A stretch of 63,562 bases of DNA, counting the filler, from Octopus bimaculoides (Eukaryota): NCBI RefSeq assembly GCF_001194135.2. It is 5 parts of 4 records of this genome, joined end to end, with 100 filler letters (N's around TTAATTAATTAA, not from the genome) between each part and the next. Parts side by side here need not be neighbours in the genome. Positions count along the whole stretch, not along the records: positions 1 to 11,961 come from NC_068997.1; 4 more parts are not named here. One strand, given 5' to 3'. Below are positions 10,998 to 11,060 of this stretch, in pieces; position 1 is the stretch's first letter; every line of letters starts with the position of its first letter. The translations under genes and the position numbers were made by a program. Under the pieces are notes generated by a model that worked only from the letters and a program-made list of their open reading frames with translations, ran no database searches and was not told the DNA's origin.

Positions 10998-11060
10998 CCA
11001 GTACATTTTTGTTTACGGTGAGGTGGTCTTGAAAGTACCACCTCACCGTAAACAATTTTA
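10998..11060 (-). other. Intronic element complementary to ATP13A exon 9250-9398, with an alternative 19-bp hairpin
   Basis: The plus strand matches the exon sense sequence in two blocks: a 15-nt exact block and a 30-nt block with 2 mismatches. 11009-11027 and 11037-11055 form a perfect inverted repeat. Confidence 0.85.

What the first reader, a model, noticed from the sequence alone, without database searches (positions are those of the whole stretch)
10998..11060. Candidate RNA switch or editing-complementary sequence: intronic antisense copy of an ATP13A coding exon that can also fold on itself
Seen: on the transcribed (minus) strand this intron segment is complementary to exon 9250-9398 in two blocks, CCAGTACATTTTTGT (15/15) and GAAAGGACCACCTCACCGTAAACTATTTTA (28/30), separated by a 15x18 internal loop. 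The 18-nt spacer is itself a copy of the exon sequence, so the element can instead form a 19-bp hairpin (11009-11027 with 11037-11055) that excludes exon pairing. It matches no repeat family seen in this window. Established: ADAR recoding depends on exon-intron duplexes, and coleoid cephalopods recode extensively. Inference: pairing could direct A-to-I recoding of TAC at 9312 (Y to C in SSFQY) or AAA at 9268-9266 (K to E/R in HRKL), both with the preferred 5' U. It would also loop out exon 10599-10749, which could affect splicing.
Basis: partly seen in the sequence, partly recalled or inferred. Interest (0 to 1): 0.82.

Follow-up and report, generated by a model that had tools for sequence, protein, structure and literature searches.

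The report
Inverted exon fragment inside an octopus intron
A 64-base backwards copy of part of a coding exon sits in an upstream intron of an octopus ATP13A3-type transporter gene and could pair with that exon in the RNA, but it is missing from an argonaut and a squid-type relative and looks like a recent copying accident, not a proven editing or splicing control.

Summary
Window 10998-11061 is a reverse-complement copy of exon 9250-9398 positions 9257-9317. The middle 11-15 nt are replaced by the reverse complement of the neighbouring arm, which makes a perfect 19-bp hairpin (-39 kcal/mol, z -9.2). The host gene (minus strand) is an ATP13A3-like P5B ATPase, 95% identical to the Octopus vulgaris protein. 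Six exons are mapped, all with canonical splice sites.

In an equilibrium fold of the unspliced 1.9-kb RNA, a 47-bp interrupted duplex between the element and the exon wins (P 0.88-0.99). The hairpin-to-duplex barrier is about 10 kcal/mol. The duplex holds 14 exonic adenosines, 10 of them recoding.

There is no evidence of function:
- The element is absent from the orthologous loci of Argonauta hians and a decapodiform, where the host intron is 134 and about 175 nt, against 852 nt here.
- It carries Octopus-type codons.
- Outside the two positions tied to the palindrome it matches the exon 44/44.

Best reading: a young, lineage-restricted templated inverted insertion (template switch or snap-back) that is at most an incidental ADAR substrate. 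O. vulgaris and O. sinensis DNA and RNA-seq were out of reach, and those would decide it. Interest is moderate to low.

The parts
10998..11061 (-). The whole element: an inverted copy, antisense in the pre-mRNA, of exon B positions 9257-9317, with a rewritten centre.
   Evidence: blastn E 3e-9. Homology stops at these ends; the flanks resemble neither the genomic nor the spliced continuation of the exon.
10998..11012 (-). Block 1: 15/15 complementary to exon B 9303-9317.
   Evidence: Pairing probability 0.99 in the 1.9-kb fold.
11011..11028 (-). Spacer and 3' hairpin arm. It is an exact direct copy of exon 9265-9282 and also the reverse complement of the adjacent arm (22/23).
   Evidence: 18/18; arm comparison read directly.
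11027..11061 (-). Block 2: 35 nt, 91% complementary to exon B 9257-9291. It contains the 5' hairpin arm, 11037-11055.
   Evidence: I8. (mean pairing probability 0.88).
11009..11055 (-). Quasi-palindrome: a 19-bp perfect stem (11009-11027 with 11037-11055), then a 1-nt bulge, 2 more bp and a 4-nt loop.
   Evidence: -39.1 kcal/mol, z -9.17. (self-inverted match, E 4.5e-10).
9250..9398 (-). Exon B (149 nt), source and pairing partner. It encodes ..[49 protein letters not shown]. The paired stretches 9257-9291 and 9303-9317 end 7 nt from the 5' splice site.
10599..10749 (-). Exon A (151 nt), which lies between the element and exon B and would be looped out. Skipping it shifts the frame to a stop after 4 codons.
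10750..11601 (-). Host intron between exons U and A: 852 nt here, 134 nt in Argonauta hians and about 175 nt in a decapodiform.
11602..11674 (-). Exon U (73 nt; YATNLADFQFLYIDLIITTSVAVL), upstream of the host intron.

Best explanation
The element is a young insertion, restricted to an Octopus lineage, made by templated copying. It was not built by selection.

Origin (inferred). A 61-nt internal piece of exon B was copied in inverted orientation into the intron two introns upstream. The centre of the copy (AGCTTTTGCTT, up to 15 nt) was overwritten by the reverse complement of the adjoining arm, either in the same event or in a second one. That is the signature of a replication template switch or of snap-back synthesis during end joining, and it produced a perfect 19-bp quasi-palindrome.

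Consequence in the pre-mRNA (predicted). The element is bistable. The hairpin can form as soon as it is transcribed. Once exon B is made about 1.7 kb later, a 47-bp interrupted duplex with the exon is the more stable state, for as long as the host intron is still unspliced. That duplex is long enough to be an incidental ADAR substrate. It also lies 7 nt from the exon's 5' splice site.

Function. Any editing or splicing effect is most likely a low-level, neutral or slightly harmful side effect.

Shown versus inferred. Shown: the sequence anatomy, the folding predictions, and the absence from two outgroups. Inferred: the mutational mechanism, the young age and the lack of function.
For: Anatomy:
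- One inverted copy of 9257-9317 with only the centre replaced.
- The replacement is 22/23 the reverse complement of the adjacent arm, with a 2-nt centre.
- The junctions share short homologies: TTGT on one side and TCTT/TCTC on the other.

Age:
- The only two base differences from the exon lie at the base and at the apex of the palindrome. The other 44 of 44 positions are identical.
- The copy carries Octopus-type codons, CGT AAA C.A, where Argonauta has AGA AAA CGA.

Phylogeny:
- There is no inverted copy of exon B anywhere in the 74-kb Argonauta hians gene or in 20 kb around exon B of a decapodiform.
- The host intron is 134 and about 175 nt in those species, against 852 nt here.

No sign of use:
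- All 12 annotated O. sinensis and O. vulgaris isoforms keep exons U to E unchanged.
- Skipping exon A would create a premature stop.
- No Rfam family reaches its threshold.

Precedent:
- Template switching creates perfect hairpins in a single event (PMC5453318, PMC8794818).
- Polymerase theta makes templated insertions in cis (snap-back) and in trans (PMC4912351, PMC5068794).
Against: - The source exon is 1.7 kb away, further than typical short-range template switches. No ancestral or empty-site allele was available to show the event directly.
- Near-perfect complementarity would also be expected under selection for pairing.
- One of the two differences from the exon (T to A at 11054) lengthens the stem from 17 to 19 bp. 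That could reflect selection for the hairpin as easily as a by-product of copying.
- The predicted equilibrium strongly favours the exon duplex, and coleoid neural tissue edits heavily, so some editing is quite possible.
- Presence or absence in close congeners is unknown.
Confidence: 0.6

Rival explanations
1. It is a working, newly born editing-complementary sequence. The intronic antisense copy pairs with exon B in nascent RNA and directs ADAR to recode conserved TM9-10 residues (Q to R, Y to C, I to V, K to E/R, H to R). The hairpin acts as a competing state that tunes how much editing occurs.
For: - A 47-bp interrupted duplex is in the minimum-energy fold, with pairing probability 0.88-0.99 at 12, 20 and 37 C.
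- The switch barrier is about 10 kcal/mol.
- 14 exonic adenosines lie opposite U, 10 of them recoding, and four have the favoured 5' U.
- Intronic ECSs and distant intronic inducer elements are established in mammals (PMC3479170, PMC7045468).
- Coleoids recode extensively (PMC9068888, PMC8382921).
Against: - Absent from Argonauta and from a decapodiform.
- The targeted residues (FQY, SKG, HRK, FYTN) are strongly conserved in P5B ATPases, so recoding them is more likely harmful.
- The host intron must outlast transcription of 1.7 kb that includes a whole exon.
- Equilibrium occupancy does not change with temperature.
- No RNA evidence. A full-text search for octopus, RNA editing and ATP13A found no paper, and the supplements of PMC8382921 do not mention the gene.
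Confidence: 0.15
2. It is a splicing modulator. Pairing loops out exon A or masks the 5' splice site of exon B, giving a regulated unproductive isoform.
For: - Exon A lies inside the loop, and the duplex ends 7 nt from the exon B donor site.
- Long-range intron-exon pairing is known to affect exon choice (general knowledge).
Against: - Skipping exon A (151 nt) or exon B (149 nt) shifts the frame. Skipping A gives a stop after 4 codons.
- There are no annotated isoforms of this kind in O. sinensis or O. vulgaris.
- The element is absent from the outgroups.
Confidence: 0.06
3. The hairpin is a young small-RNA precursor (miRNA- or siRNA-like) born from an inverted duplication of its own target, comparable to template-switch-born miRNAs.
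For: - The stem is perfect and very stable.
- There are weak miRNA-model hits on both strands (mir-6301 25 bits, mir-606 22 bits).
- Template switching is proposed to create new miRNA hairpins (bioRxiv 10.1101/2023.04.19.537475).
Against: - All Rfam hits fall far below their gathering scores of 70-80 bits.
- The stem is only 19+2 bp with a 4-nt loop, shorter than animal pri-miRNA stems of about 33-35 bp with loops of at least 10 nt (general knowledge).
- No small-RNA data were available.
Confidence: 0.03
4. It is an assembly or library artefact, a chimeric inverted join in a draft scaffold.
For: - The window comes from a gapped draft assembly (748 N at 5224-5971).
- Inverted chimeras do occur in some library types (general knowledge).
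Against: - The element is a three-part mosaic with two substitutions and an indel relative to the exon.
- It is only 64 nt long and sits in unique sequence with no N nearby.
- Chimeric joins are normally long and identical to their source.
Confidence: 0.05

Closest known systems
Intronic editing-complementary sequences, such as the GRIA2 Q/R-site ECS, and distant intronic editing inducer elements (Gabra-3; PMC3479170)
   Same: An intronic stretch is complementary to a coding exon and can form an imperfect duplex in the pre-mRNA that covers recodable adenosines. Action over a distance within the pre-mRNA has precedent.
   Different: - Classic ECSs lie in the adjacent intron, usually the downstream one. 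They are conserved together with the edited site and have demonstrated editing.
- This element lies two introns upstream with a whole exon in between.
- It is absent from two cephalopod outgroups, has no editing data, and is an obvious recent copy of the exon.
Template-switch mutations that create perfect hairpins (four-point model; PMC5453318, PMC8794818; new miRNAs, bioRxiv 10.1101/2023.04.19.537475)
   Same: A short segment is replaced by the reverse complement of neighbouring sequence. One event yields a perfect stem, and the switch points share short homologies.
   Different: Here the template-switch-like palindrome sits inside a copy that is itself an inverted transfer from 1.7 kb away. 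Either two events or one multi-jump event is needed. No ancestral allele is available to confirm this.
Templated (filler) insertions of polymerase-theta-mediated or synthesis-dependent end joining (PMC4912351, PMC5068794, PMC2943611)
   Same: Short mosaic insertions copied from nearby sequence in direct and inverted orientation, with snap-back synthesis and microhomology at the junctions.
   Different: Templates are usually within tens of bases of the break, whereas this one is 1.7 kb away. The pre-insertion sequence is unknown, so no deletion or junction signature can be scored.
Plant miRNA genes born by inverted duplication of their target genes (from memory, not checked here)
   Same: A foldback whose arms derive from a coding exon of the gene it could pair with.
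   Different: The stem is far too short for animal Drosha and Dicer processing, and there is no small-RNA evidence.

Membership tests
[quoted passage not shown] | An intronic sequence forms a duplex with the exon that covers the edited adenosine in the pre-mRNA. | tested here: met
   47 bp paired in the minimum-energy fold of the 1.9-kb unspliced RNA, with probability 0.88-0.99. duplexfold gives -62.8 kcal/mol. This is a prediction only.
[quoted passage not shown] | A-to-I editing is observed at exonic adenosines within the duplex. | not testable with these tools
   No RNA-seq access. Literature and supplement searches found nothing for this gene.
[quoted passage not shown] | Editing depends on the intronic element, shown by deletion or compensatory mutation. 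| not testable with these tools
   This needs a minigene experiment.
[quoted passage not shown] | The ECS is conserved across related species. | tested here: not met
   Absent from Argonauta hians (L001) and from a decapodiform contig (L002). Close congeners could not be fetched because the gene spans more than 100 kb.
Template-switch mutation or quasi-palindrome | The replaced segment equals the reverse complement of adjacent sequence. | tested here: met
   The left arm, TTGTTTACGGTGAGGTGGT-CTT, matches the reverse complement of the right arm at 22/23. The self-inverted blastn match has E 4.5e-10.
Template-switch mutation or quasi-palindrome | An ancestral or outgroup sequence shows the pre-event state. 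| tested here: inconclusive
   Only the source exon serves as a proxy for the pre-event copy. No orthologous intron containing the copy was available.
Animal pre-miRNA or mirtron | A hairpin of pre-miRNA dimensions that matches a known family or yields small-RNA reads. | tested here: not met
   Rfam hits score 20-25 bits against gathering scores of 69-80. The stem is 19+2 bp with a 4-nt loop. Small-RNA reads could not be tested.
SINE or other transposable-element family of this window | Sequence similarity of the element or its flanks to the repeat family. | tested here: not met
   An nhmmer profile of the SINE copies finds nothing in 10850-11250. With the element excised the best hit has E 5.3. 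blastn finds only a 15-mer at E 0.49.
P5B-type ATPase (ATP13A3-like), the host gene | Sequence homology of the encoded exons to P5B ATPases. | tested here: met
   PDB ATP13A2 at E 2.6e-10. The 257-aa C-terminus is 95% identical to O. vulgaris ATP13A3-like. Six exons have canonical splice sites.

The most novel reading that the evidence does not exclude
This is an editing-complementary sequence caught at birth. A template-switch insertion copied from the exon instantly created a bistable intronic hairpin/long-range duplex. In one Octopus lineage, that duplex now recruits ADAR to recode otherwise invariant TM9-10 residues of the polyamine-transporter-type ATPase ATP13A3. If so, it would show one concrete mutational route by which coleoids gain new recoding sites.
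Probability: 0.12. Interest if true: 0.7.

Novelty: new member of a known kind. Interest (0 to 1): 0.35.

Why it matters
How new ADAR recoding sites and their complementary sequences arise is poorly documented. This matters most in coleoid cephalopods, where recoding is massive but the pairing partners are mostly unmapped. An exon-derived inverted micro-insertion that creates about 47 bp of exon-intron complementarity in one step would be a simple origin mechanism, and here it can be tested on a single locus. If the element turns out to be neutral, it is still a clean example of a templated inverted insertion with a snap-back palindrome in a cephalopod genome. It would also be a caution: striking exon-intron complementarity alone does not make an ECS.

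Tried and rejected
1. The flanks of the element belong to the SINE family seen in this window. By eye, ATTTTATGGCATGAGTCCCTT and TTTACATGGCACCAG resemble it. An nhmmer profile of the copies gives no hit, either natively or with the element excised (E 5.3). Rejected.

2. Retro-copy origin from spliced mRNA. tblastn read KVPPHRKQFYGMSPFT against KGPPHRKRFYTNVPFT across the exon B/C junction. At nucleotide level the right flank matches neither the spliced continuation (p 0.21) nor the genomic one (p 0.12), and the left flank does not extend the homology (p about 1). Whether the template was DNA or RNA is undecidable.

3. Fetching orthologous introns from close congeners.
- The first two protein searches, using window-derived peptides, missed the octopus proteins.
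- A search with P0001 found O. vulgaris, O. sinensis and Argonauta.
- The O. sinensis and O. vulgaris genes span 125 and 122 kb, so no DNA was returned.
- Isoform X2 was not on record.
- Eleven window ORFs are not in the collection.
- A metagenome scan with a 31-nt pattern found nothing.

4. Published editing data for this gene: none found.

5. Known RNA families: only sub-threshold miRNA-like hits.

6. Temperature switch: the equilibrium occupancy of the duplex is the same at 12, 20 and 37 C.

Full report
**The observation**

The plus strand at 10998-11061 reads CCAGTACATTTTTGT TTACGGTGAGGTGGTCTT GAAAGTACCACCTCACCGTAAACAATTTTAT. The plus strand at 9257-9317 reads ATAAAATAGTTTACGGTGAGGTGGTCCTTTCGAGAAAGCAAAAGCTACAAAAATGTACTGG.
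- The first 15 nt of the element are the exact reverse complement of 9303-9317.
- The last 31 nt are 29/31 the reverse complement of 9257-9287. The repeat finder extends this to 35 nt at 91% (I8).
- The middle contains an exact 18-nt direct copy of 9265-9282.
- A strict local alignment confines the homology to these 64 nt.
- Within the 12-kb piece, blastn gives E 3e-9 for the exon match and 4.5e-10 for the internal palindrome.
- The hairpin has 19 contiguous bp plus 2 more. Energy is -39.1 kcal/mol over 81 nt, with a z-score of -9.17 against dinucleotide shuffles.

**The host gene**

On the minus strand I mapped six exons, all with AG/GT sites, ending at a stop codon:

| Exon | Coordinates |
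|---|---|
| U | 11674-11602 |
| A | 10749-10599 |
| B | 9398-9250 |
| C | 7933-7845 |
| D | 7041-6958 |
| E | 4934-4707 |

- The 99 aa encoded by exons A and B match human ATP13A2 residues about 990-1078 (E 2.7e-10).
- The 257-aa C-terminus is 95% identical to Octopus vulgaris "cation-transporting ATPase 13A3-like". The window therefore comes from an octopus that is neither O. vulgaris nor O. sinensis.
- The element lies in the U-A intron, 249 nt upstream of exon A. Exon A sits between the element and its pairing partner, exon B.

**Anatomy and likely origin**

Read in mRNA sense, the element is one inverted copy of exon B positions 9317 to 9257. Only the centre differs: AGCTTTTGCTT(TCTC) is replaced by TTACGGTGAGGTGG(TCTT). 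The replacement, together with 4 nt on each side, is 22/23 the reverse complement of the adjoining arm, with a 2-nt centre. It is a near-perfect palindrome.

That is the pattern produced by template-switch mutation, in which replication briefly copies the complementary or nascent strand and creates a perfect stem in one event (PMC5453318, PMC8794818). Snap-back and trans-templated insertions during polymerase-theta end joining produce the same pattern (PMC4912351, PMC5068794, PMC2943611).

The two base differences from the exon both sit at palindrome-related positions:
- G to T next to the bulge at the apex.
- T to A at the base, which lengthens the stem from 17 to 19 bp.

The other 44 of 44 positions are identical to the exon. 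This points to a recent event, or to constraint.

The flanks show no significant similarity to the genomic continuation of exon B (p 0.12), to its spliced continuation (p 0.21), or to the exon upstream of the copied piece (p about 1). It therefore cannot be decided whether DNA or RNA was the template. My impression that the flanks were SINE-derived did not survive a profile search.

**Predicted behaviour in RNA**

- The element-exon duplex scores -62.8 kcal/mol, against -33.7 for the hairpin core.
- I folded the whole unspliced stretch 11120 to 9230 (1891 nt). The minimum-energy structure pairs 47 element bases with exon B. Mean pair probabilities are 0.99 for the 15-bp block, 0.88 for the long block and about 0 for the hairpin, and they are the same at 12, 20 and 37 C.
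- In a reduced model, the best direct path from the hairpin state to the duplex has a barrier of about 10 kcal/mol. A hairpin formed first during transcription is therefore not a dead end.
- The duplex contains 14 exonic adenosines, all opposite U. Ten would recode:

| Position(s) | Change |
|---|---|
| 9315 | Q to R |
| 9312 | Y to C |
| 9310 | I to V |
| 9286, 9285 | K to E/R |
| 9273 | H to R |
| 9268, 9267 | K to E/R |
| 9258 | Y to C |

- These residues lie in the [15 protein letters not shown] motif, which is conserved from octopus to human.
- The duplex ends 7 nt from the exon B donor site.
- Skipping exon A (151 nt) gives a stop after four codons. Skipping A and B together keeps the frame.

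These are predictions. They require the U-A intron to remain unspliced while 1.7 kb more is transcribed.

**Comparative evidence**

- A library-wide HMMER search returned a squid-type full-length protein (P0001). Using it as the query returned the O. vulgaris/O. sinensis cluster and an Argonauta hians protein.
- The Argonauta gene (L001, 74 kb) was fetched. Its U-A intron is 134 nt, and no inverted copy of exon B exists anywhere in the locus. The best inverted hit is 21 nt at E 0.07.
- A decapodiform genomic contig (L002) has a U-A intron of about 175 nt and likewise no such copy.
- The element copies the Octopus-type codons CGT AAA CTA, whereas Argonauta has AGA AAA CGA. It therefore arose after that split, within an intron that grew from under 200 nt to 852 nt.
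- The O. sinensis and O. vulgaris genes span more than 100 kb, so their DNA was not delivered. Window ORFs are not in the collection. The decisive comparison with close congeners could not be made.
- All 12 annotated isoforms of those two species share an unchanged C-terminal exon set. No alternative splicing is annotated in this region.

**Other checks**

- Rfam gives only sub-threshold miRNA-like hits on the hairpin (20-25 bits against gathering scores of 69-80).
- Literature searches found no report of editing in this gene.
- General sources confirm that neural recoding sites in coleoids lie mostly in coding sequence, while intronic editing mostly overlaps repeats (PMC9068888). They also confirm that nearby reverse-complement matches of at least 50 nt and at least 80% identity are used as proxies for dsRNA substrates (PMC9989829). 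This element meets that proxy.

**Verdict**

What supports function is only its potential to pair. Its mosaic palindromic build, its near-identity to the source exon, its absence from two outgroups, the frameshift that exon skipping would cause, and the conservation of the residues it would recode all fit a recent templated insertion better. Such an insertion would be at most an incidental ADAR substrate.

| Reading | Probability |
|---|---|
| Young neutral or near-neutral insertion | about 0.6 |
| Working ECS | about 0.15 |
| Splicing modulator | about 0.06 |
| Assembly or library artefact | about 0.05 |
| Small-RNA precursor | about 0.03 |

In kind it is a new member of known classes: template-switch quasi-palindromes, and candidate intronic ECSs. 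Interest is moderate to low unless RNA-seq or congener genomes show editing or conservation.

Noticed in passing
window 6266-6445 (inverted) against 9493-9685 and 9701-9885: Copies of a SINE-like repeat with a (GAT)n-type tail lie in opposite orientation in the introns flanking exons B, C and D. 6299-6344 and 9610-9655 are 89% complementary over 46 nt (I6). This is the classic layout for exon circularisation (B+C+D = 322 nt) and for repeat-driven ADAR editing. Its complementary arms are comparable in length to the element's (46 nt at 89% and 55 nt at 82%, against 47 bp).
   Followed up: partly
window 1022-1294 (+): An open frame encoding ankyrin repeats (Pfam Ank_2, E 2.7e-8) lies on the opposite strand, downstream of the ATPase gene's last exon. 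It is probably an exon of a convergent neighbouring gene.
   Followed up: partly
window 10750-11601; L001 68428-68561; L002 about 6244-6417: The U-A intron is 852 nt in this octopus, 134 nt in Argonauta hians and about 175 nt in a decapodiform. Most of the intron is therefore lineage-specific gain. It includes (TG)n at 11478-11510 and AT-rich sequence.
   Followed up: partly
window 9876-10007: Two tandem 66-nt units (74% identical, D13) follow the SINE copy. Each contains the motif GGTGCTTTTTACATGCCAC, which recurs at 9668 and 9860.
   Followed up: no
window 10205-10261 and 1396-1452: A 57-nt repeat (74% identical, D18) with a tRNA B-box-like GGTTC..GTTCA.TCCC motif. It is probably the head of a second, tRNA-derived SINE family.
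   Followed up: no
window 5224-5971: A run of 748 N: a scaffold gap inside the intron between exons D and E. The assembly is a gapped draft.
   Followed up: yes
window 11725-11802: A (TA)n(CA)n microsatellite gives sub-threshold Rfam hits to mir-297, mir-466 and mir-1277 (52 bits against a gathering score of 90). This is a low-complexity artefact, not a miRNA.
   Followed up: yes
L002 18276-20231: An open frame with endonuclease, reverse transcriptase and RNase H domains (a LINE ORF2) lies about 8 kb downstream of exon B in the decapodiform contig.
   Followed up: no
protein searches: The word-indexed protein search missed the 95%-identical O. vulgaris protein when queried with the 99-aa and 257-aa window peptides. 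It found that protein when queried with a 64%-identical full-length squid-type protein. A negative result from that tool with short queries is therefore weak evidence.
   Followed up: yes
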